A program made the position numbers and the translations under genes. From IMG/VR virus record IMGVR_UViG_3300050014_000823, positions 124,001 to 188,000 of that record: a stretch of 64,000 nt of DNA. One strand, 5' to 3'. Position 1 is the first letter of the stretch. Each line of letters starts with the position of its first letter. Below, piece after piece: positions 15,692 through 23,497 of this stretch. A model generated the notes under the pieces. It was not told the DNA's origin, did no database searches, and was given only the letters and a program-made list of their open reading frames with translations.

Positions 15692-18600
15692 TTATTCCAA
15701 AACTAATGAGGAAATACCGTCTTCATCCACAGTCACATTAATAAGGTAATCTGGGTTGATTTCTTCCTTATGTTCGATGACTAAAGTTTTCTTCATGTGG
15801 TTTTTAATAACATGAAGTATCTCAATGAATTCTTCAACGCTTTCGTCACTTAATTTACCCATAACTTCGTCAAGTAAGAACATCATTGGTTTTGCCTTGA
15901 TGTTAATTTGATTCAGAGCGAACTTTAACACCACGCTTGAGAATGTTCTTTCCTTACCACTTGCTGAGATACAATCAATGACTGCGCCAGGTCTGCTGTT
16001 GTAGACTAATTTAGGTCTGAGGTCGTCTTCATCGAGCCATACCTTAAACTGTGCTACCGACAATATGTTTTCCAAGGTCAGATTAATCTTAGGCAGAATA
16101 TAATTAACAAGCATTTGCTTTGGAATACCGTCACGGTGCACGCACTTCTTATATAGTGCCATAACAGAGTCTTGATATTCCTGTATTTTAAACTCGACAA
16201 TCAGTAATTCGTTGTTTTTAATTCTGATTTGTCTGTCAGCAATTGCTGTTTTTTTCAGATACAAATCTTCTGTAAGTTCACGCTCATCGTTTTCAAGTAA
16301 ACGAATCTTATCCTTTGCAGCGACAATACCCTTTTCAATCTTCTGATTTTCTTCGATTTGTAATATGTTATTGTCGTAATTGTCAATTTTCTGTTGCAGG
16401 ATTGAAATTTTAAGTTCTTCGTTCTGAATCTTCACGGGAATCTGGTCGAGTTCTACTTGAAGTTCTTTACGCCTGTTGACATCATTCATTTCGTTGGTGA
16501 GCGTACCGATTTCTTTCAGCGTACTTTCCATTTCAAGAGCATCGTTTTCAATAATTGTCTTAACTCCAGTAATTTCCTTATTTTTAGCATCAATTACATC
16601 TTGATTATTTTTAATGTCAACACTAAGCCATTTTTTAATGTCATCGGCAAGAGGAAACATTAATGCCTCAACTGCTTTAATCTTTTCAGTGATATGGTCT
16701 TGATGCTCTGCAGTTAATAGCTGTCCACAAGTAGGACAGATTTTACTATCTTTGAGTTCTTGAATATCTTTCTTATATTGTGCACCTTGTTGTTTATGTC
16801 TTAAAACATAGCCATTAAATATCTCAATCTGATGCTCTGCAGCCATGATGGTTTGTTCATGACCCTTGATTACCATCCTATTAGTATACTCATTAGTTTT
16901 ATGTGCATCCTTTTTCCAAGTAAGTTGTTGTAACCTTTCAGCATCATATGTTTCCCGCAAAGCTGCGATACTTGTTTCAAGAATGCCTTTACGTTGATTG
17001 TGTTGCTTGATAGTCTCGTTATGTATACCAATAGTCTTCTTGACACTATCTACGCTTAAATTAGCTATTTCGGGGTCTATTTTAAACAATTTCTTCGTCA
17101 ATGTCTCGACATAGGTTCTACCTGTTTGAATTTTTCCTTGAACTTCAGGGATTTTAATTGTTTCGTAATCCAGTACTTCGGCATCAAGCAATCTAATATC
17201 TTCCAAGTATTGTTGATTTTGCGATGTGGTTGCTTCGACATTACATGTGACTCTATTTCTCTCATTTGCTTTTTTCTGATATACCTTCAAACCTTCGAGT
17301 TTCTTGTCGAAAATGTCTAAGCCAGTGTCGAAGAGTAGTGAGTCAATAAAAACTGCCATATCATTTGATAATATGCGGTTTAACGTATCAGAGGTAGTCA
17401 TGACAATACGCATAAAGTTATCATAAGTGCCTAAGATGATGTCTAAGTTCTTTTGGGTTTTTATTCTGCGGTCATCATCGAGTTTTTCCAATACTGTATT
17501 ATCATCCATTTCTTCATCAGGATTTGACAGCAAATAATAACTCAATGTGGTTGGAGCACCTTTAATCTCACCAGATTTGTTTTTTTCAATTGTGGTTTTT
17601 TTCTTGATACCATAATATTCACCATTGGCTTCGATTACAATATAACCCTCGCAAAAGGTCGCACCGTTTCTGTTGTTGACAAAACGTGAATCACCAAATT
17701 GTTTACGACTTTCTGTTTCCAATGACTTACCGAACAATATGTAGGTGATAAGTTTCATGATAGTTGTTTTCCCGGCAGTGTTTATACCTGTAATCTGAAA
17801 CAAACCATCCATGTCACGCCAATCAACGTCAATGTTAGCATATGATGCGAAATTCCTACCACCGAACTTAATCACGTTCCACTCAAGGTTGCTTACCTCA
17901 TCAAGGGTAATGCTTGCAGTAATCTCTTCATCCAATGCAATTATATCTGCAACAAGTTGTGGGTCAGTACCGATTTTTTCCAAGTATTCTTTGAATATTT
18001 CGTGCTGAACAGCCTCATCGCTGATGTTTTCAATGGTAACGTTTTCATTGACATCCATTTTATCGGCTTCAATGAATTCGTTTTTGTGCGAGATAATAAC
18101 GTTTTTATGTTGTGACTTTAAAAATTCAACTAATTTTCTCTCATTATCTTTTGTCCTTGACTGCGGAAGCGTACCCCAGACAAATCTGACTCTCATGTGC
18201 TTCGTAGGATTTGGTATGTCTAATTCCAAGTCATCAAAGTCAGTAAACGGAGTGATTTTGACGTTTTTAAATGAATAATTATTCTTAATTGGGAACTCTT
18301 CAGCACTCATAGAATCCAAATGCCACAACAGATATCCGTGGAAATTGTCGTCACCCTCACTTACGTCCTGTGCAATTAATGACCCGCAATATGCTTTGGT
18401 ATGTAATGCATCGAGATACTGCATCCTATGTATGTCACCAAACATAGATAGGTCGCCTTTGAACTCTGAAAGTTTGTAATATGACTTACTTTTCATTTCA
18501 AACCCAGTGGTTGACTTACAGCCACTTATCGGGTCATGGAATAGGTCAATTGCAATTTGACCATCAGTTCTTCCACTGAGAAATTCTTTACCTGCCTTGG

Positions 18601-19015
18601 TTTTCCAAGGATTGTTTTTCTGGTCACCATGATGCCAAACCGCCCAAACTACATTATCGTCTTGATATAACGTTGTTTTATCGTAGTATTCGACATTGGG
18701 ATTGTTCAATGTCTTGACGATTGCACGTATACTATCAACTCGCTTGAGATTTTTCTTCCTGCAGTCGTGATTACCTCTTGTTATCCTCACAGGAGCAATC
18801 ATTGCCAAAGTATTGAGTAAATCGTGTGCTAATATAAGTTGTTCACCCTGTAAGTCAAGGTAATCGTGAACCAAGTCACCGACAACAACAATTCTGTCGG
18901 GTTTTTCTTTTTCTAAAGATTTTATGAGATTTTTAAATACTTCTTCGTATTCGTCATTTCGTACTGGTACTTTTCTGATGTGGATATCTGCAAGGTGAGC
19001 AATCTTTTTTATCAT
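15692..19015 (-). CDS. sbcCD: SbcD(Mre11)-SbcC(Rad50) fusion recombination nuclease/ATPase
   Basis: Phosphoesterase motifs ADIH, GDLVH, GNHD, GDIH; Walker A GINTAGKTT; Zn hook CPTCG; signature SASGKE; Walker B FLLDE; H-loop IEH. Confidence 0.9.
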   Translation of the reverse strand: MIKKIAHLADIHIRKVPVRNDEYEEVFKNLIKSLEKEKPDRIVVVGDLVHDYLDLQGEQLILAHDLLNTLAMIAPVRITRGNHDCRKKNLKRVDSIRAIVKTLNNPNVEYYDKTTLYQDDNVVWAVWHHGDQKNNPWKTKAGKEFLSGRTDGQIAIDLFHDPISGCKSTTGFEMKSKSYYKLSEFKGDLSMFGDIHRMQYLDALHTKAYCGSLIAQDVSEGDDNFHGYLLWHLDSMSAEEFPIKNNYSFKNVKITPFTDFDDLELDIPNPTKHMRVRFVWGTLPQSRTKDNERKLVEFLKSQHKNVIISHKNEFIEADKMDVNENVTIENISDEAVQHEIFKEYLEKIGTDPQLVADIIALDEEITASITLDEVSNLEWNVIKFGGRNFASYANIDVDWRDMDGLFQITGINTAGKTTIMKLITYILFGKSLETESRKQFGDSRFVNNRNGATFCEGYIVIEANGEYYGIKKKTTIEKNKSGEIKGAPTTLSYYLLSNPDEEMDDNTVLEKLDDDRRIKTQKNLDIILGTYDNFMRIVMTTSDTLNRILSNDMAVFIDSLLFDTGLDIFDKKLEGLKVYQKKANERNRVTCNVEATTSQNQQYLEDIRLLDAEVLDYETIKIPEVQGKIQTGRTYVETLTKKLFKIDPEIANLSVDSVKKTIGIHNETIKQHNQRKGILETSIAALRETYDAERLQQLTWKKDAHKTNEYTNRMVIKGHEQTIMAAEHQIEIFNGYVLRHKQQGAQYKKDIQELKDSKICPTCGQLLTAEHQDHITEKIKAVEALMFPLADDIKKWLSVDIKNNQDVIDAKNKEITGVKTIIENDALEMESTLKEIGTLTNEMNDVNRRKELQVELDQIPVKIQNEELKISILQQKIDNYDNNILQIEENQKIEKGIVAAKDKIRLLENDERELTEDLYLKKTAIADRQIRIKNNELLIVEFKIQEYQDSVMALYKKCVHRDGIPKQMLVNYILPKINLTLENILSVAQFKVWLDEDDLRPKLVYNSRPGAVIDCISASGKERTFSSVVLKFALNQINIKAKPMMFLLDEVMGKLSDESVEEFIEILHVIKNHMKKTLVIEHKEEINPDYLINVTVDEDGISSLVLE

Positions 19016-19030
19016 TACTAAAAATTTTTA

Positions 19031-19038
19031 CAAATATA
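19031..19038 (-). promoter_or_regulatory. Bacteroidota-type -7 element TATATTTG
   Basis: TAnnTTTG 16 nt upstream of the sbcCD ATG, with TTG further upstream. Confidence 0.6.
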
Positions 19039-19067
19039 TCTAAATCACCCTTATAATGCAAGGGTTT

Positions 19068-19814
19068 TTATAAATTGTCAATAATCCACGAATTACTTGA
19101 CTTATCTCTTTTAATATGATATTTTTTTATCAGTCTATAAAATGTCCTTAAATTCATATTTATTTTTTTGGCTGCAATATTAATCGTACCGGATGAATTT
19201 AATGCCTTAAGCATCGATGAAACCTTTTGAAATTCTAAATTTAATTCACCGTTATCTACCTTTCTCAAAATTGTGCTTCCACCATAATTTTTATTAAAAA
19301 GTATACCTGTTCCATTGTCTAATCTACCGAAATAATTAATAAACACTTGCTCAATATGATATGCATCAATTTCAGTAACATTTTCAATCAACTTTACGGC
19401 AGAAAAATCATTGGTTGACTTTAATTCATTAATGCGCTCGATTAAATTAGTGTCCCTATTATTCATGTCTGAAATTCTACCGTTTTTACCCTTACCAAAA
19501 TATATTGGTTCATAGTATAAATAAAAATTACCAACTCTAATATCTACTTCTTTTCTCATATTATAATATACATAAACGTAATAATTATTGGTCGCACGAT
19601 TGTTGTTGATTGTGTCGATGATTGTAGCATCTTCGATTTTTATTTCATTAAAATAATTAATATCGGTGATTTTAATCTTATAATGTTCTAATATCGCTTC
19701 CTCAATCACATCATTTACGCTAACGTCTTGATTTTCATCTTTAGATAATGTTATTCTAATTTCTTCAAGTTTATTAAATAAACCATCAGATAACTCATAC
19801 ACAATTTTTTTCAT
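19068..19814 (-). CDS. LEM-3-like GIY-YIG endonuclease with N-terminal RHH-like and C-terminal HTH segments (start reassigned to MKKIV)
   Basis: YYVYVYY...IYFGKGK..R and E..FI..FGR...G.L.N; late motif at 19828-19836. Confidence 0.65.
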   Translation of the reverse strand: MKKIVYELSDGLFNKLEEIRITLSKDENQDVSVNDVIEEAILEHYKIKITDINYFNEIKIEDATIIDTINNNRATNNYYVYVYYNMRKEVDIRVGNFYLYYEPIYFGKGKNGRISDMNNRDTNLIERINELKSTNDFSAVKLIENVTEIDAYHIEQVFINYFGRLDNGTGILFNKNYGGSTILRKVDNGELNLEFQKVSSMLKALNSSGTINIAAKKINMNLRTFYRLIKKYHIKRDKSSNSWIIDNL

Positions 19815-19836
19815 AACTAAAATTTTATATAAATAC

Positions 19837-19857
19837 TGACAATTTTGAAATTTGTCA
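19837..19857. promoter_or_regulatory. Imperfect inverted repeat TGACAATTTT-G-AAATTTGTCA (operator candidate)
   Basis: In the divergent intergenic region upstream of hsp20; a second TGACA at about 19875. Confidence 0.4.
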
Positions 19858-19947
19858 TGTTTTAATGTAAATTTTGACATTAAATACTCAATGGTATGAT
19901 TTCTGATAAGTTATGTGAAAATAACTTTATTTAAAATTTTAAAAGCT

Positions 19948-20286
19948 ATGTTAGTAAGAAGAAGCACAACACCATCCATTTTGGATTTGATATTCGATGA
20001 CGATTTATTTAATCCATTCAAAGACACATCGATTCAATGCCCGATTCACGATGTTATCGAAAACGAAAAAGAATTTGTTGTTGAAGCAATGTTAGCCGGG
20101 GTTAAAAAGGAAGATGTTCTCGTTGATATCAACGCAAGGAGATTGTCAATTGAGGCAGTACGCAAGGAAGTTAAAGACCTGAAATACAACCGTAAAGAAT
20201 CCTATACAGGCAAATATAAAAGGTCTTTCATTTTACCGGATATTGCCGATGCAGAAAACATCACAGCCAACTTGGAAGACGGGGTA
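19948..20286 (+). pseudogene. Hsp20 small heat-shock protein, 5' part (interrupted)
   Basis: Alpha-crystallin motifs DVIENEKEFVVEAMLAGVKKEDV and FxRSFILP..AD.ENITANLEDGV; the frame leaves hsp20 after GGG GTA. Confidence 0.9.
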
Positions 20287-20386
20287 CATGAACAGTTCGG
20301 TTAAATCTACAAAAAATTACAAGAACCTATGAAAATCTATGAAAAAAATAAATTTAAGAAAAACCGATATTTTTATTTAATATATA

Positions 20387-20395
20387 CTATTTATA
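20387..20395 (+). promoter_or_regulatory. Phage late-type motif CTATTTATA inside the IS, upstream of tnpB
   Basis: Same motif as the structural genes, on the tnpB sense strand. Confidence 0.5.
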
Positions 20396-20427
20396 AAAGG
20401 GATTAAAAATTAACCCGTAAAACAAAA

Positions 20428-21720
20428 ATGATAAAAGCAGTTAAAATAAGACTTTATCCGAACAAAACTCAAAGTAGTTATATAAATCGTCTATGTGGTT
20501 CATATAGAAAGATTTATAATATGTGTTTGGAGAAGAAAATAACCGCTTATACAACAGATAAAACAACAGTAACATTTGGTGATTTAGGTAAATATTTTCA
20601 TCAAGACCTAACTAAAAATGAAGAATTTAATTATCTTAATGAACACAATACTAAAGTATTAAAGCAAAGTATTATTGATTTAATGGATGCCTATAAACGA
20701 TTCTTCATCAACAATACTGGTTTTCCAAAATATAAATCAAAACATGACAGTAAACAATCGGCAAGGTTTCCTTTAGAAGCAATATCAAAACTAAATAGTT
20801 ATTCAGATAATAAAATAACTTTAGGTAAAAACTTACAAAAGATTGGCTTTGAATGCAGTGACAGAGATAAAAATTATTTAACTAATCATAAAGATAAAAT
20901 TAAATCAGCAACTATAAGTAGAACCAAATCAGATAAATATTTTTTATCAATACTAATTGAAAATATAATTGAAAAACAAATACCAGAACCAACTAATGAT
21001 ATTTTAGGTATTGATATTGGTATAAAAGATTTTATGGTTTGTTCTGATGGTCAGGTATTTGATAACTTAAAGTTAAAAAGAAATAATGAAAAGACTTTAA
21101 CTAAATTACAAAGACAATTAAGTAAAAAAGTTATTGGGAGTCATAACAGGTATAAAATCAAATTAAAATTAGCAAAGAAACACGAAAAATTAAATAATAT
21201 AAAAATAAATTACATACATAACATTACAACTCAATTAGTTCGTGAGAACCAAACGATAGTTATTGAGAATTTAAATGTTAAAGGTATGTTAAAAAACCAT
21301 TGTTTGGCAAAATCAATTCAAGATTTAAGTATCAACGAGACATTCAGACAGTTAAAATATAAATCTGAATGGTATGGAAGAGATTTGATTATAATAGACA
21401 GATGGTTTCCTTCATCAAAATTATGTAATGTTTGCGGTTATAAGTATAAAGAATTATCATTAAAAGAAAGGTATTGGACTTGTCCAGACTGTGGAACACA
21501 ACATAATAGAGATTATAATGCCGCAACAAACATTAAAAATGAAGGTCAGAGAATTTTAAATAATAAAATAGGGACACGTTATCCCGAATTTACGCTTGAG
21601 GACAATCCAACTATGGATGACAGACTTAGCAATAAGGTACTAAAAAGTAGTGATTGGTTGAGACAAGAAGAAAAAAGTACAAATAGTGAACGAAGTGAAC
21701 TTCGTACTAATTTTTTGTAG
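20428..21720 (+). CDS. tnpB: RNA-guided endonuclease TnpB
   Basis: N-terminal AVKIRLYPN HTH; RuvC-I LGIDIG, RuvC-II IVIENL, Zn finger CNVCG/CPDCG, RuvC-III HNRDYNAA; the D/E/D triad is intact. Confidence 0.95.
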   Translation: MIKAVKIRLYPNKTQSSYINRLCGSYRKIYNMCLEKKITAYTTDKTTVTFGDLGKYFHQDLTKNEEFNYLNEHNTKVLKQSIIDLMDAYKRFFINNTGFPKYKSKHDSKQSARFPLEAISKLNSYSDNKITLGKNLQKIGFECSDRDKNYLTNHKDKIKSATISRTKSDKYFLSILIENIIEKQIPEPTNDILGIDIGIKDFMVCSDGQVFDNLKLKRNNEKTLTKLQRQLSKKVIGSHNRYKIKLKLAKKHEKLNNIKINYIHNITTQLVRENQTIVIENLNVKGMLKNHCLAKSIQDLSINETFRQLKYKSEWYGRDLIIIDRWFPSSKLCNVCGYKYKELSLKERYWTCPDCGTQHNRDYNAATNIKNEGQRILNNKIGTRYPEFTLEDNPTMDDRLSNKVLKSSDWLRQEEKSTNSERSELRTNFL

Positions 21721-21755
21721 ATTTTTTTGAACGGTATTAACAGTTACAATTCCAA
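21575..21755 (+). ncRNA. Predicted omegaRNA scaffold plus guide (boundaries approximate)
   Basis: TnpB omegaRNAs overlap the 3' end of the ORF and right end, with the guide taken from the flank. This call is positional only; the RNA was not folded. Confidence 0.4.
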
Positions 21756-21802
21756 AACTTGACAAAGCCAAAGAACTAAAGACAAAAATTGAGATTAAAT
21801 AA
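21737..21802 (+). pseudogene. Hsp20, 3' part (LTVTIPKLDKAKELKTKIEIK*)
   Basis: Completes the GVLTVTIPK...IEI C-terminal motif. Confidence 0.9.
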
Positions 21803-21813
21803 CGCATGTCTCA

Positions 21814-21851
21814 AAAACAAGATGAGGTCACAAATTGTGACCTCATTTTTT
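21814..21851. terminator. Bidirectional terminator
   Basis: Stem ATGAGGTCACAA/TTGTGACCTCAT with an A-run before and a T-run after, between convergent genes. Confidence 0.8.
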
Positions 21852-22500
21852 ATTCGAATATGTCTTCTGGCATTGACTTCTTTAACTTTGTTTTTATGTA
21901 GTTGATTTTGTTGCTCACAGTACTACTCGTAAGTTGGAATTCACTGCCAATTTCCTTATAGTCATACCCTTGAACATATTTCATATCAAGCAGGGCATAG
22001 TCATCGGGCGATATTTGTTTGGAAATATAGCTTAGTGCATTGCTATTCTCAAAGTTACATGAAGTTGAGTTTACAATTGAGCCAGTAACTGTGCCTGAGT
22101 TTGAAACTGAAACATTCCCATCACTCACAGTAAATGTATTGTTGAAATATCCACCCGAACCATAGTCACAGGAAGTCAGAGTAACATTTGTGTTTGCGGG
22201 TAATATGGTGGTACAGCAGACTGCAGTACAACGCCACTTATCTATCATGTAATTTTTACAGATTGTCAACACCCAAGATTTGAATTTAGCTTTGTGTTCG
22301 CTAAAGTCCTTGATGTTCATGAAGATTTTAATCAGCACTTCTGATACGTCATCGTCAATATCGTAATAGGTTTTGTATTTGCTTAAAATAAAATCTTTAA
22401 CAACTTTTCTATAACGTTTATACAGTATTTCTTGTGCCGTCTGATTTCCATCCAAAATATTTTGAATTAGAACTATATCGTCCTGCTCCTTGCTTATCAT
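21850..22500 (-). CDS. ECF-type sigma-70 factor with an unusual Ser/Thr/Cys-rich linker (start likely MISKE)
   Basis: Region 2 (DDDVSEVLIKIF...FKSWVLTICKNYMIDKWR) and region 4 HTH (GYDYKEIGSEFQLTSSTVSNKI). Confidence 0.8.
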   Translation of the reverse strand: MISKEQDDIVLIQNILDGNQTAQEILYKRYRKVVKDFILSKYKTYYDIDDDVSEVLIKIFMNIKDFSEHKAKFKSWVLTICKNYMIDKWRCTAVCCTTILPANTNVTLTSCDYGSGGYFNNTFTVSDGNVSVSNSGTVTGSIVNSTSCNFENSNALSYISKQISPDDYALLDMKYVQGYDYKEIGSEFQLTSSTVSNKINYIKTKLKKSMPEDIFE

Positions 22501-23497
22501 AAGGTTTTGCCAACTTATTAATAAAGTAATCATCCACAGTCAAACCCCTTGCGCTACGTAGGCTTTTCAGTACTTCGTCAATACCTCTTCTCTTACGAAG
22601 TTCATCCAAATCCTTCTCACAAGGAATTTTAACTATTTTGACCCTTTCCTCACAATCCACATAAATATTATGTAGGGTGTAATACAATTCAATAGCATTT
22701 TTATATGCGTCAGGGTCTAATAAAACCACAACATCTGGTTTTAATTCTTTCAGTTTTAAAAATAAAGTCGATGAAATTGTCTTTCCCAACATCGGTATGA
22801 TGTTAACGGGGAAACTGAACATTTCAAATGCGCCTTCAACAAGATATACAGTAGAATCCCAATTTACAAATCCCTCATTAAAGATAATCTTGTCTTTATC
22901 AGACTTTGGATTATCATAGGGTTTAATTTTCTTATTTCCAATATCATAATTTCTTGCAACGAAATAATTGACCTCACCGTTCTTATCGTATGACGGTACA
23001 ATTATTCTTTTTTCATATTTACCTGTAGTACAAAAACCAAGCCGATATTTTAAAATTATATCCCTTGATATCATTCTTTCATTAATCATGTAGTTATATG
23101 CCTCAAAATGTTCTTGATTTGTTGCATCCATTTGACTGAATAAAATCATTTCCTCTGGCAACTTTACAGCTACATATTCTTTTTCATCATCCTCATTATA
23201 TTCATAATCTGCATAAATGCTTGCATATGATTTATAAAGGTCATAATCTATCGAAGTTCCGAATGTCCGGATTAATCTGCCAAGCGAACCACTGAACTTT
23301 GGCTCATCACACTTCCAACACCTAAACATTCTCTTAGCAGTGTTGATTTCTAAGTTGAATTTTCCGTCAGGATAACTAAGACCCTCTCTTTCTTGGCAAT
23401 GCGGACAGTTAACCTGTACCTGTTCAGATACTTGCAAACCATTTACATCGCCAAAGACGTTCTGGATTATACTATGAAATTCCTGTCCCCGAATCAT
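22418..23497 (-). CDS. dnaG: DNA primase (Zn-binding domain plus TOPRIM)
   Basis: CPHC...CWKC Zn motif; RIIVPSYD..G.VNYFVAR; VYLVEG and LLDPDA TOPRIM motifs. Confidence 0.85.
   Translation of the reverse strand: MIRGQEFHSIIQNVFGDVNGLQVSEQVQVNCPHCQEREGLSYPDGKFNLEINTAKRMFRCWKCDEPKFSGSLGRLIRTFGTSIDYDLYKSYASIYADYEYNEDDEKEYVAVKLPEEMILFSQMDATNQEHFEAYNYMINERMISRDIILKYRLGFCTTGKYEKRIIVPSYDKNGEVNYFVARNYDIGNKKIKPYDNPKSDKDKIIFNEGFVNWDSTVYLVEGAFEMFSFPVNIIPMLGKTISSTLFLKLKELKPDVVVLLDPDAYKNAIELYYTLHNIYVDCEERVKIVKIPCEKDLDELRKRRGIDEVLKSLRSARGLTVDDYFINKLAKPYDKQGAGRYSSNSKYFGWKSDGTRNTV

What the first reader, a model, noticed from the sequence alone, without database searches (positions are those of the whole stretch)
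19948..21802. TnpB-only IS607-like element splitting hsp20, with a predictable guide and TAM
SEEN: removing 1450 bp between the GGTA copies gives ...NLEDGVLTVTIPK...IEIK* (134 aa). The ends carry a 17-bp inverted repeat (AAATCTACAAAAAATTA), and further AAATCTAY-like direct repeats lie at the left end. There is no tnpA, and TnpB catalytic residues are intact. KNOWN: IS607 elements recombine at a GG core, and TnpB cuts empty alleles using the right-flank guide. INFERENCE: guide = TATTAACAGTTACAATTCC..., TAM about GGGG, which differs from the element's own right end (ACGG) and avoids self-cutting. The element would home into intact hsp20 of co-infecting phages.
Basis: partly seen in the sequence, partly recalled or inferred. 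Interest (0 to 1): 0.62.

Follow-up and report, generated by a model that had tools for sequence, protein, structure and literature searches.

The report
TnpB-only IS607 transposon splitting phage hsp20
A 1,450-bp selfish DNA element carrying only an RNA-guided nuclease gene (TnpB) and its guide RNA, with no transposase, sits precisely inside the small heat-shock gene of a 299-kb phage. It is an ordinary though well-preserved member of the known IS607 transposon family.

Summary
hsp20 (19948-20284) is split by a 1,450-bp insert (20285-21734). Its last 21 codons resume at 21737. Six intact alleles in syntenic relatives read straight through ...EDGV|LTVT... at this point.

The insert carries:
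- a 143-nt left end
- an intact 430-aa TnpB (D196/E280/D362, two CxxC pairs)
- a right-end RNA whose fold is backed by compensatory changes in 22 of 23 pairs across 24 distinct relatives

GG sits at both junctions. The right end stops in ACGG. Sixteen related copies all lie after VGGG. This matches the published IS607 rule of an xGGG TAM against an xCGG right end. The predicted TAM is GGGG and the guide is TATTAACAGTTACAATTCC.

Relatives with 50-56% identical TnpB carry a serine TnpA, so the family assignment holds. No group I intron is present, so it is not an IStron.

New here:
- The same genome holds a second copy, splitting a mazG-like gene.
- It also holds two serine tnpA genes about 29 kb upstream of the element, outside the window.

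Homing into co-infecting phages is plausible but untested. None of the intact alleles found has the TAM or a matching target. Verdict: a new member of a known kind, of modest interest.

The parts
19948..20284 (+). 5' part of hsp20. The interrupted frame runs on to a stop at 20302-20304, giving a 118-aa truncated product with the tail HEQFG.
   Evidence: Pfam HSP20 1.1e-15; translation; 77-90% identical to the N-terminal part of intact 134-153-aa alleles
20281..20284 (+). Predicted TAM, GGGG. Its last two bases (20283-20284) are the left copy of the GG recombination core.
   Evidence: Sequence; left flanks of 16 related copies end in VGGG; published IS607 TAM TGGG
20285..21734 (+). The 1,450-bp TnpB-only IS607-family element, in the register with the left GG in the flank and the right GG in the element. 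GC is 25.9% against 34.7% for the window.
20285..20427 (+). Left end, 143 nt, non-coding. It starts TACATGAACAGTTCGG, holds the inverted-repeat arm 20303-20319 and an AAATCTAT repeat at 20333-20340, and then a conserved ATATATACTATTTATAA block upstream of tnpB.
   Evidence: 87% identical to the left end of the second copy L005
20428..21720 (+). tnpB, 430 aa, intact. RuvC residues are D196, E280 and D362. Zinc-finger cysteines are C333/C336 and C352/C355.
   Evidence: Pfam; alignment to ISDra2 TnpB structures 8bf8/8h1j; positions
21550..21734 (+). omegaRNA (reRNA) scaffold. It overlaps the 3' end of tnpB and ends in ...UUUUUUUGAACGG.
   Evidence: Covariance model R1 scores 170.8 bits. On 24 distinct sequences 94.4% of cells pair and 22 of 23 pairs show compensatory change, against 37-55% pairing in slid controls. 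Consensus fold from 8 copies.
21708..21724 (-). Right arm of the 17-bp perfect inverted repeat, a putative TnpA-binding motif. It contains the tnpB stop codon.
21735..21753 (+). Predicted guide-templating flank, TATTAACAGTTACAATTCC, which is also the target in an empty allele. The true guide length is not known.
   Evidence: It directly follows the ACGG end of the scaffold. This rests on analogy with CboTnpB, whose scaffold ends ...UCGG. It is the only match with 3 or fewer mismatches over its first 16 nt that lies next to a G-rich motif in the window.
21737..21802 (+). 3' part of hsp20: 21 codons, LTVTIPKLDKAKELKTKIEIK, plus the stop. It holds the last beta strand and the C-terminal I-x-I motif.
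   Evidence: aligns with the C-termini of intact alleles
21822..21846 (.). G+C-rich hairpin flanked by T runs, between the convergent hsp20 and sigma-factor genes. It is the likely terminator for read-through from tnpB/omegaRNA.
   Evidence: (I6)

Best explanation
This is a non-autonomous IS607-family insertion sequence: left end, tnpB, omegaRNA and right end, with no transposase gene. It lies in hsp20 of a 299-kb phage. A serine TnpA supplied in trans inserted it by conservative recombination at a GG core, in the site GGGG|TA. That is why there is no target duplication and why removing the element restores the reading frame exactly. Transcription through tnpB yields an RNA whose structured 3' part, ending ...GAACGG, binds TnpB, and the next roughly 16-20 nt (UAUUAACAGUUACAAUUCC) serve as the guide. 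The TnpB-omegaRNA complex should cut any hsp20 allele reading GGGG + TATTAACAGTT.... That means the donor joint left by excision, or an empty allele in a co-infecting genome of the same population. It should spare its own right junction, which reads ACGG at the same place. Recombinational repair from an occupied copy would then re-install the element. Shown here: the anatomy, the precise joint, family membership, an intact nuclease, a structurally conserved RNA, the VGGG versus ACGG rule across the family, a second copy in the same genome, and tnpA genes in the same genome. Inferred: RNA expression, cleavage, the exact TAM and guide length, which TnpA moved it, and homing. My confidence is about 0.9 that it is an IS607-family TnpB-only element. 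It is about 0.6 that TnpB-omegaRNA is active with an NGGG-type TAM, and about 0.35 that it spreads between co-infecting phages.
For: Precise interruption: intact alleles read through the same point. GG(T) is at both junctions of this copy and of the second copy L005, which splits a mazG-like gene; intact alleles of that gene, L124 and L125, read AIKG|ELSD. TnpB domains and catalytic residues are intact. The right-end RNA shows strong covariation. Of 25 matches to the RNA model, 24 end in CGG, 23 of them in ACGG, and 21 of the 24 are followed by T; 16 left flanks end in VGGG (A 10, G 4, C 2, T 0). Published IS607 biology fits: GG core, TGGG target and TAM, scaffold ending UCGG, discrimination at -3, TnpB-driven retention. 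Autonomous relatives L044, L013 and L054 have a serine TnpA (Resolvase + MerR HTH) directly upstream of a TnpB 50-56% identical to this one, and the same right end, TAGATTTTTTTGAACGG. In the tree the window copy lies in a 100/100 clade of five TnpA-less copies, inside an all-viral clade that also holds the TnpA-linked L044 and L054. The same genome has two serine tnpA genes (L064, contig 114,885-116,139).
Against: No empty allele with the GGGG TAM and the exact target was found in the viral or metagenome collections. All intact alleles found have GGTG, GGAG, GGTA or similar at the TAM position and 3 or more target mismatches, so no natural substrate is documented. The two copies in this genome are only 82% identical in TnpB, so neither is a very recent duplicate of the other. 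The nearer tnpA (TnpA#1) has lost its C-terminal tail, and its own left-end repeats differ from AAATCTAC. A terminator-like hairpin with a T run (21690-21705) lies about 30 nt before the guide and could limit guide synthesis. Nothing here measures RNA or cleavage.
Confidence: 0.75

Rival explanations
1. Inert relic. The element inserted once, can no longer move or cut, and simply knocks out a dispensable hsp20. TnpB and the RNA look intact only because too little time has passed.
For: No matching empty allele was found anywhere searched. There is no tnpA in the element or window. TnpA#1 in the genome is C-terminally altered. A terminator-like hairpin precedes the guide.
Against: The TnpA-less clade has diverged to 72-82% TnpB identity while every member keeps a full-length ORF of 412-445 aa. 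The clade members that carry the right-end RNA (window, L005, L012, L003) sit at a different site in each genome. The RNA fold is kept by compensatory changes. Such persistence argues for selection on function and for repeated mobilisation. Both hsp20 fragments are free of further stops or frameshifts.
Confidence: 0.18
2. IStron. [quoted passage not shown]
For: Some IS607 elements in Clostridia are IStrons. The insertion is in frame with respect to the restored ORF.
Against: No Rfam family reaches its gathering score anywhere in the window. No group I intron match appears even at E up to 10 in 19800-21950. Only 143 nt precede tnpB and 14 nt follow it, too little for a group I core. In the source paper's excision assay, the wild-type substrate carried 581 bp of native left end.
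Confidence: 0.03
3. Phage weapon rather than transposon keeper. TnpB-omegaRNA is kept because it cuts the hsp20 of competing phages (interference competition), whether or not the element is copied into them.
For: The guide covers the DNA for the conserved sHSP strand GVLTVTIP. An unrelated viral hsp20 (L106) carries a perfect 29-nt match. Such killing of competitors is known for phage homing endonucleases (review PMC13565253).
Against: Every relative's allele examined lacks NGGG at the TAM position, and L106 has GGAG. The other copies of the family target unrelated genes, as expected of a transposon and not of a dedicated weapon.
Confidence: 0.04

Closest known systems
CboIStron / IS607-family TnpA(S)-TnpB-omegaRNA of Clostridium botulinum (Zedaveinyte et al., bioRxiv 10.1101/2023.11.20.567912)
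   Same: GG core at both ends. Target and TAM are xGGG, the omegaRNA scaffold ends in xCGG, and self is told from non-self at position -3. The guide is templated by the right flank, and tnpB and its omegaRNA overlap at the right end.
   Different: There is no tnpA and no group I intron. Position -4 of the TAM is V (mostly A, here G), not T. The left end is only 143 nt. The carrier is a phage genome. The omegaRNA matches no Rfam family.
ISFba1 and other IS607 TnpBs guided by RAGATH-18-derived RNAs (Ren et al., Cell Res 2024, PMC11061315)
   Same: An IS607-associated TnpB of about 390-430 aa with a RuvC D-E-D triad, a right-end guide RNA and a G-rich TAM.
   Different: Their TAMs are AGGAG or GAGGG. 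RAGATH-18 was not detected here, even at E up to 10.
ISDra2 TnpB (IS200/IS605; PDB 8bf8, 8exa, 8h1j)
   Same: The closest natural solved structure, E 1.7e-60 over residues 3-373. An AI-designed nuclease (9yyg) scores higher. Same domain order and same catalytic residues.
   Different: ISDra2 moves by a Y1 HUH TnpA as single-stranded DNA and has a TTGAT TAM. Here the clade is linked to a serine TnpA, has a GG core and a VGGG flank.
Free-standing and intron-borne homing endonucleases of T-even phages (Seg, Mob, I-TevI), and the 'transposon non-restorative homing' proposed in review PMC13565253
   Same: The expected population behaviour is the same: cut the empty allele of a co-infecting genome and be copied in by recombinational repair. 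A phage Mre11-Rad50-type nuclease gene lies next door (15692-19015).
   Different: Recognition is by RNA guide plus TAM, not by protein. No transfer between phages has been shown for this element.
TnpB genes in deposited phage genomes (416 of 50,697 records; best are the Prevotella Lak megaphages at 48% identity)
   Same: TnpB-type genes, often several per genome, in large phages of Bacteroidota and in many other phages.
   Different: Those records are unannotated or call the gene 'transposase'. Their ends, guides and targets were not examined here.

Membership tests
IS607 family (serine-recombinase insertion sequences) | Encodes a serine recombinase TnpA (MerR-type HTH plus resolvase catalytic domain) | tested here: not met
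   No tnpA in the element or the 64-kb window. It is present in clade relatives L044, L013 and L054 directly upstream of tnpB, and twice elsewhere in the same genome (L064). The element is therefore a non-autonomous derivative.
IS607 family (serine-recombinase insertion sequences) | GG core dinucleotide at both junctions, no target-site duplication, and scarless joint on removal | tested here: met
   GG at 20283-84 and 21733-34. The second copy shares only GGT. Removing the element restores hsp20 and the mazG-like gene exactly as in intact alleles.
IS607 family (serine-recombinase insertion sequences) | Insertion downstream of a G-rich motif that matches the TnpB TAM, and a right end ending in xCGG | tested here: met
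   16 left flanks end in VGGG. 24 of 25 RNA-model matches end in CGG, 23 of them in ACGG. Compare the published TGGG and TCGG.
IS607 family (serine-recombinase insertion sequences) | Subterminal repeated TnpA-binding motifs rather than classical terminal inverted repeats | tested here: inconclusive
   AAATCTAC/AAATCTAT repeats lie in the left end and one inverted copy in the right end. Relatives carry 2-4 copies. Binding by a TnpA was not tested.
TnpB / OMEGA RNA-guided nucleases | OrfB_IS605 RuvC fold with a D-E-D triad and a zinc-ribbon TNB domain | tested here: met
   Pfam PF01385, PF07282 and PF12323. D196, E280 and D362, and the CxxC pairs, align to ISDra2 TnpB.
TnpB / OMEGA RNA-guided nucleases | Structured omegaRNA that overlaps the 3' end of tnpB and abuts the right boundary | tested here: met
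   Model R1 finds it in 27 places, always at the 3' end of a tnpB or at a right end. 22 of 23 pairs show compensatory change and 94.4% of cells pair, against 37-55% in slid controls. The alignment was fitted to the model, which favours the structure.
TnpB / OMEGA RNA-guided nucleases | Guide- and TAM-dependent DNA cleavage | not testable with these tools
   Needs small-RNA sequencing and a cleavage or interference assay.
IStron (IS plus group I intron) | Group I intron ribozyme spanning the element ends | tested here: not met
   No Rfam hit at gathering score. No Intron_gpI hit at E up to 10 in 19800-21950. The non-coding ends are 143 nt and 14 nt.
IS200/IS605 family | Y1 HUH TnpA, subterminal hairpins, and an AT-rich penta-nucleotide (TTGAT-like) 5' of the left end | tested here: not met
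   The left flanks are VGGG. Clade relatives pair this TnpB with a serine TnpA, not a Y1 TnpA. A dedicated search for Y1 TnpA was not run.

The most novel reading that the evidence does not exclude
A TnpA-less IS607 lineage persists in large virulent phages as an RNA-guided gene drive. TnpB-omegaRNA cuts empty alleles in co-infecting genomes and the phage's own recombination machinery copies the element in. Related phages escape through silent changes that remove the TAM. At both loci examined, only the occupied allele reads NGGG, while every intact relative has a synonymous GGT/GGA or AAA-GGT instead.
Probability: 0.25. Interest if true: 0.6.

Novelty: new member of a known kind. Interest (0 to 1): 0.35.

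Why it matters
The IS607 TnpB mechanism has been worked out in bacteria. The idea that such elements could home between co-infecting phages has so far only been proposed (review PMC13565253). This locus offers a compact, fully specified test case: a defined guide and TAM, defined self/non-self bases, a second copy in the same genome, candidate trans-acting transposases, and natural intact alleles that differ at the TAM. It also shows that one IS607 lineage has spread widely in large uncultivated phages, mostly without its transposase, and that it interrupts conserved phage genes. It adds no new principle, and the phage is known only from metagenomes.

Tried and rejected
- Group I intron/IStron: Rfam at gathering score over the whole window and at E up to 10 over 19800-21950 found nothing relevant. 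The only nearby hit was a sub-threshold RAGATH-30 match (E 0.52) on the first codons of tnpB, taken as noise from the conserved coding sequence.
- Megablast of 19000-23000 against 50,697 deposited phage genomes gave no match.
- An exact search for the reconstructed empty joint in viral contigs gave nothing.
- A degenerate search in metagenome contigs gave one hit, L106. It is an unrelated 175-aa hsp20 that shares the 29 nt by conserved coding, with GGAG at the TAM position, so it is not an empty allele of this phage.
- The closest intact allele, P0001 (90% identity), could not be read as DNA because the sample file is too large.
- tblastn with a family TnpA against the window gave only chance hits.
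- A scan of genome contigs with TnpB gave no relative above 56% identity in cellular genomes. That search uses exact peptide words from the query, so it is biased.
- The sigma-70 promoter scan was no better than shuffles and was not used.
- IS200/IS605 membership was rejected on the flanks and on the transposase carried by relatives.
- A TldR-like dead-nuclease regulator was rejected because the RuvC triad is intact.
Full report
**What is in the sequence.** The region is a plus-strand island in a window otherwise transcribed almost wholly from the minus strand.
- An ORF starting at 19948 matches Pfam HSP20 (1e-15). It reads ...NLEDGV at 20286 and then runs into six foreign codons and a stop.
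- At 21737 the frame resumes with LTVTIPKLDKAKELKTKIEIK*.
- GGTA lies at 20283-20286 and again at 21733-21736, exactly 1,450 bp apart.
- Between them are a 143-nt non-coding left end and an intact 430-aa ORF (20428-21720). After its stop codon, 14 nt remain.
- The 17-mer AAATCTACAAAAAATTA occurs twice in the window, once at each end in inverted orientation. Shuffles allowing 2 mismatches expect 0.15. The inverted repeat extends to 28 nt at 82%.
- The insert has 25.9% G+C against 34.7% for the window.

**Where the window comes from.** The element and its flanks are identical in two IMG/VR contigs, a 299,144-bp one and a 107,774-bp one. The window corresponds to positions 124,001-188,000 of the larger. 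Neighbouring genes are a fused Mre11-Rad50-type nuclease, a sigma factor, a primase, an exonuclease and a baseplate wedge protein, so this is a large tailed phage. The best matches to TnpB among deposited phages are the Prevotella Lak megaphages, at 48% identity.

**The insertion is precise.** Syntenic relatives carry an uninterrupted hsp20 between the Mre11-Rad50 gene and the sigma-factor gene.
- These are L035, L036, L037 and L038 from viral contigs, and L202 and L203 from ENA and Logan assemblies, 87% identical and 134 aa.
- A 90% identical 134-aa protein, P0001, also exists, but its DNA could not be read.
- All read ...(E/T)DG(V/I)|L(T/K)(V/I)T(V/I)PK...IEIK across the point of insertion.
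- The truncated product lacks the last strand and the C-terminal I-x-I motif (IEIK).

**What the ORF is.**
- It has the three Pfam domains of TnpB.
- It aligns over residues 3-373 with ISDra2 TnpB structures at E 1.7e-60.
- D196, E280 and D362 fall on the catalytic D191, E278 and D361. Both CxxC pairs are present.

**Family.** Thirty-two viral loci encode relatives.
- Copies 58-82% identical (window, L005, L003, L006, L007, L012) have a left end only 85-150 nt from the tnpB start, so they have no tnpA.
- Relatives at 50-56% identity (L044, L013, L054) carry a 208-216-aa protein directly upstream of tnpB. Where scanned (L044), it has MerR-type HTH and Resolvase domains, which is a serine TnpA. 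A conserved ORF of about 70 aa precedes it in L013 and L044.
- L044 ends in TAGATTTTTTTGAACGG, like the window copy.
- In a maximum-likelihood tree the window copy falls in a 100/100 clade of five TnpA-less copies. That clade sits inside a 100/100 all-viral clade that also contains the TnpA-linked L044 and L054. L013 was left out of the tree because its tnpB is frameshifted, and sampling was driven by the query.

The element is therefore a non-autonomous IS607-family member. It fails only the criterion of encoding TnpA.

**Ends, core and TAM.**
- Of 25 matches to the right-end RNA model, 24 end in CGG, 23 of them in ACGG. Of those 24, 21 are followed by T.
- Sixteen left boundaries could be placed. 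Each is preceded by VGGG (A 10, G 4, C 2, T 0), and the element then starts with T.
- This matches what was measured for the C. botulinum IS607 element: a strict GG core, TGGG as both target and TAM, an omegaRNA scaffold ending UCGG, and self/non-self discrimination at -3.
- In the window the TAM position reads GGGG (20281-20284), the right end reads ACGG (21731-21734), and the flank that would template the guide is TATTAACAGTTACAATTCC (21735-21753).

**The RNA.** An alignment of the last roughly 180 nt of eight copies folds into a hairpin (GGGAC.../...TCCC) and a nested long-range helix system. Ten of 23 pairs show compensatory change.
- A covariance model built from it finds 27 places in 631 kb of fetched loci, always at the 3' end of a tnpB or at a right end. 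The window scores 170.8 bits at 21550-21734.
- On the 24 distinct sequences, 94.4% of cells pair and 22 of 23 pairs show changes on both sides.
- Controls with the partner slid by 1-3 columns pair at 37-55%, and no shuffle reaches the observed values.
- That alignment was fitted to the model, which favours the structure, but the margin is large.
- The region also codes for the TnpB tail, which makes maintained pairing more telling.
- No Rfam family matches it.

**Other copies and transposases in the same genome.**
- A second copy (L005, contig about 281 kb; TnpB 82% identical, right end 96%, left end 87%) splits a mazG-like gene. Its left junction reads ...ATTAAGGG|TACGTGAACAG and its right junction ...GAACGG|TGAATTATC.
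- Intact alleles of that gene in L124 (91% identical, from the same sample) and L125 read AIKG|ELSD through the site.
- About 29 kb upstream of the window element, and 8.5 kb outside the window, L064 carries a 71-aa ORF and a serine TnpA. This TnpA#1 is 58% identical to the L044 TnpA, but its basic tail after LYGK is replaced.
- It abuts a different, complete IS607 (TnpA#2, TnpB#2, right end ...ACGTAACGG).

A trans-acting transposase is therefore available in principle. Whether either enzyme recognises the AAATCTAC-type ends is untested.

**How it most likely works.** A serine TnpA acting in trans placed the element at GGGG|TA. Transcripts through tnpB give the omegaRNA, and TnpB-omegaRNA cuts GGGG + TATTAACAGTT... 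but not its own ACGG junction. Recombinational repair from an occupied copy then restores or spreads the element. The anatomy is shown here. Expression, cleavage and spread are inferred from the published IS607 and IS605 systems.

**Caveats.**
- No empty allele with the right TAM and target was found.
- All intact hsp20 alleles have GGTG, GGAG or GGTA at the TAM position and at least three target mismatches.
- The intact mazG-like alleles have AAGG, not AGGG.
- This pattern fits either insertion only into alleles that happened to read NGGG, or escape from cutting. With two loci I cannot tell which.
- A terminator-like hairpin with a T run (21690-21705), present only in the window and L005 copies, precedes the guide and might reduce its synthesis.

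**Rivals.** An inert relic is possible. However, every member of the TnpA-less clade keeps a full-length ORF at 72-82% identity, the RNA fold is conserved by compensatory change, and the members that carry the RNA sit at different sites in different genomes. Self-splicing is very unlikely. A dedicated anti-competitor weapon is not supported, because other family copies target unrelated genes.

**Novelty.** The kind is known, and TnpB genes are common in phage records (416 of 50,697). Homing of such transposons between co-infecting phages has been proposed in a 2026 review. I found no experimental report of it in the papers searched. This is a new, well-defined member with useful natural controls, not a new principle.

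Noticed in passing
L064:2197-4918 (same genome, contig 3300050014_000823 about 114.6-117.3 kb, outside the window): A composite of two IS607 elements. First comes a left end AAGGG|TTAATCAACTG, a 71-aa ORF and TnpA#1, whose tail after LYGK is replaced. Directly after it lies a different IS607 with TnpA#2 (201 aa), TnpB#2 (391 aa) and a right end ...ACGTAACGG. The tnpB and right end of the first element are missing, possibly lost by recombination between the two right ends.
   Followed up: partly
L005:3857-5352 (same genome, contig about 281 kb): A second TnpB-only copy (TnpB 445 aa, 82% identical) splits a mazG-like pyrophosphohydrolase gene. Intact alleles in L124 and L125 read AIKG|ELSD.
   Followed up: yes
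L003:820-1184: A 365-bp miniature element: a left end (GAAGGG|TTAACTAACTG...) plus an omegaRNA (R1 73.5 bits) ending ...CATACGG, with no tnpB. It lies 2.7 kb upstream of a full TnpB-only copy in the same contig and could be served in trans.
   Followed up: no
L013:3121-3375, L044:2296-2508, L064:2293-2508: A conserved ORF of about 70-84 aa (…VVRVxKxEFELDNGDxYP…) sits immediately upstream of tnpA in the phage-borne autonomous IS607 copies. The L044 ORF has no Pfam or PHROG match.
   Followed up: partly
window 19068-19880 (-): A 270-aa ORF lies between the Mre11-Rad50 fusion gene and hsp20. It is absent in L035 and L202, present in L036, and replaced by an unrelated 568-aa ORF in L037. This variable slot may hold a free-standing mobile endonuclease gene. 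Its only match is PHROG 15526, of unknown function.
   Followed up: partly
L106:6924-6952 (-) (Ga0075480_10004352): An unrelated 175-aa hsp20 in a metagenome contig has a perfect 29-nt match to the reconstructed joint, including the whole predicted 19-nt guide target (coding EDGVLTVTIP). It has GGAG rather than NGGG at the TAM position.
   Followed up: partly
window 21690-21705 (+): A terminator-like hairpin, ACGAAGTGAACTTCGT, followed by a T run lies inside the omegaRNA about 30 nt before the guide. It is an insertion found only in the window and L005 copies.
   Followed up: no
window 15692-19015 (-): A single 1,107-aa protein combines a Mre11/SbcD-type phosphoesterase domain with a Rad50/SbcC-type ATPase and zinc hook. 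The fusion is conserved in relatives L035, L038 and L202.
   Followed up: no
window 20440-20510 (+): A sub-threshold Rfam RAGATH-30 match (21 bits, E 0.52) lies on the first codons of tnpB (VKIRLYPN). It probably reflects conserved coding sequence, not an RNA.
   Followed up: no
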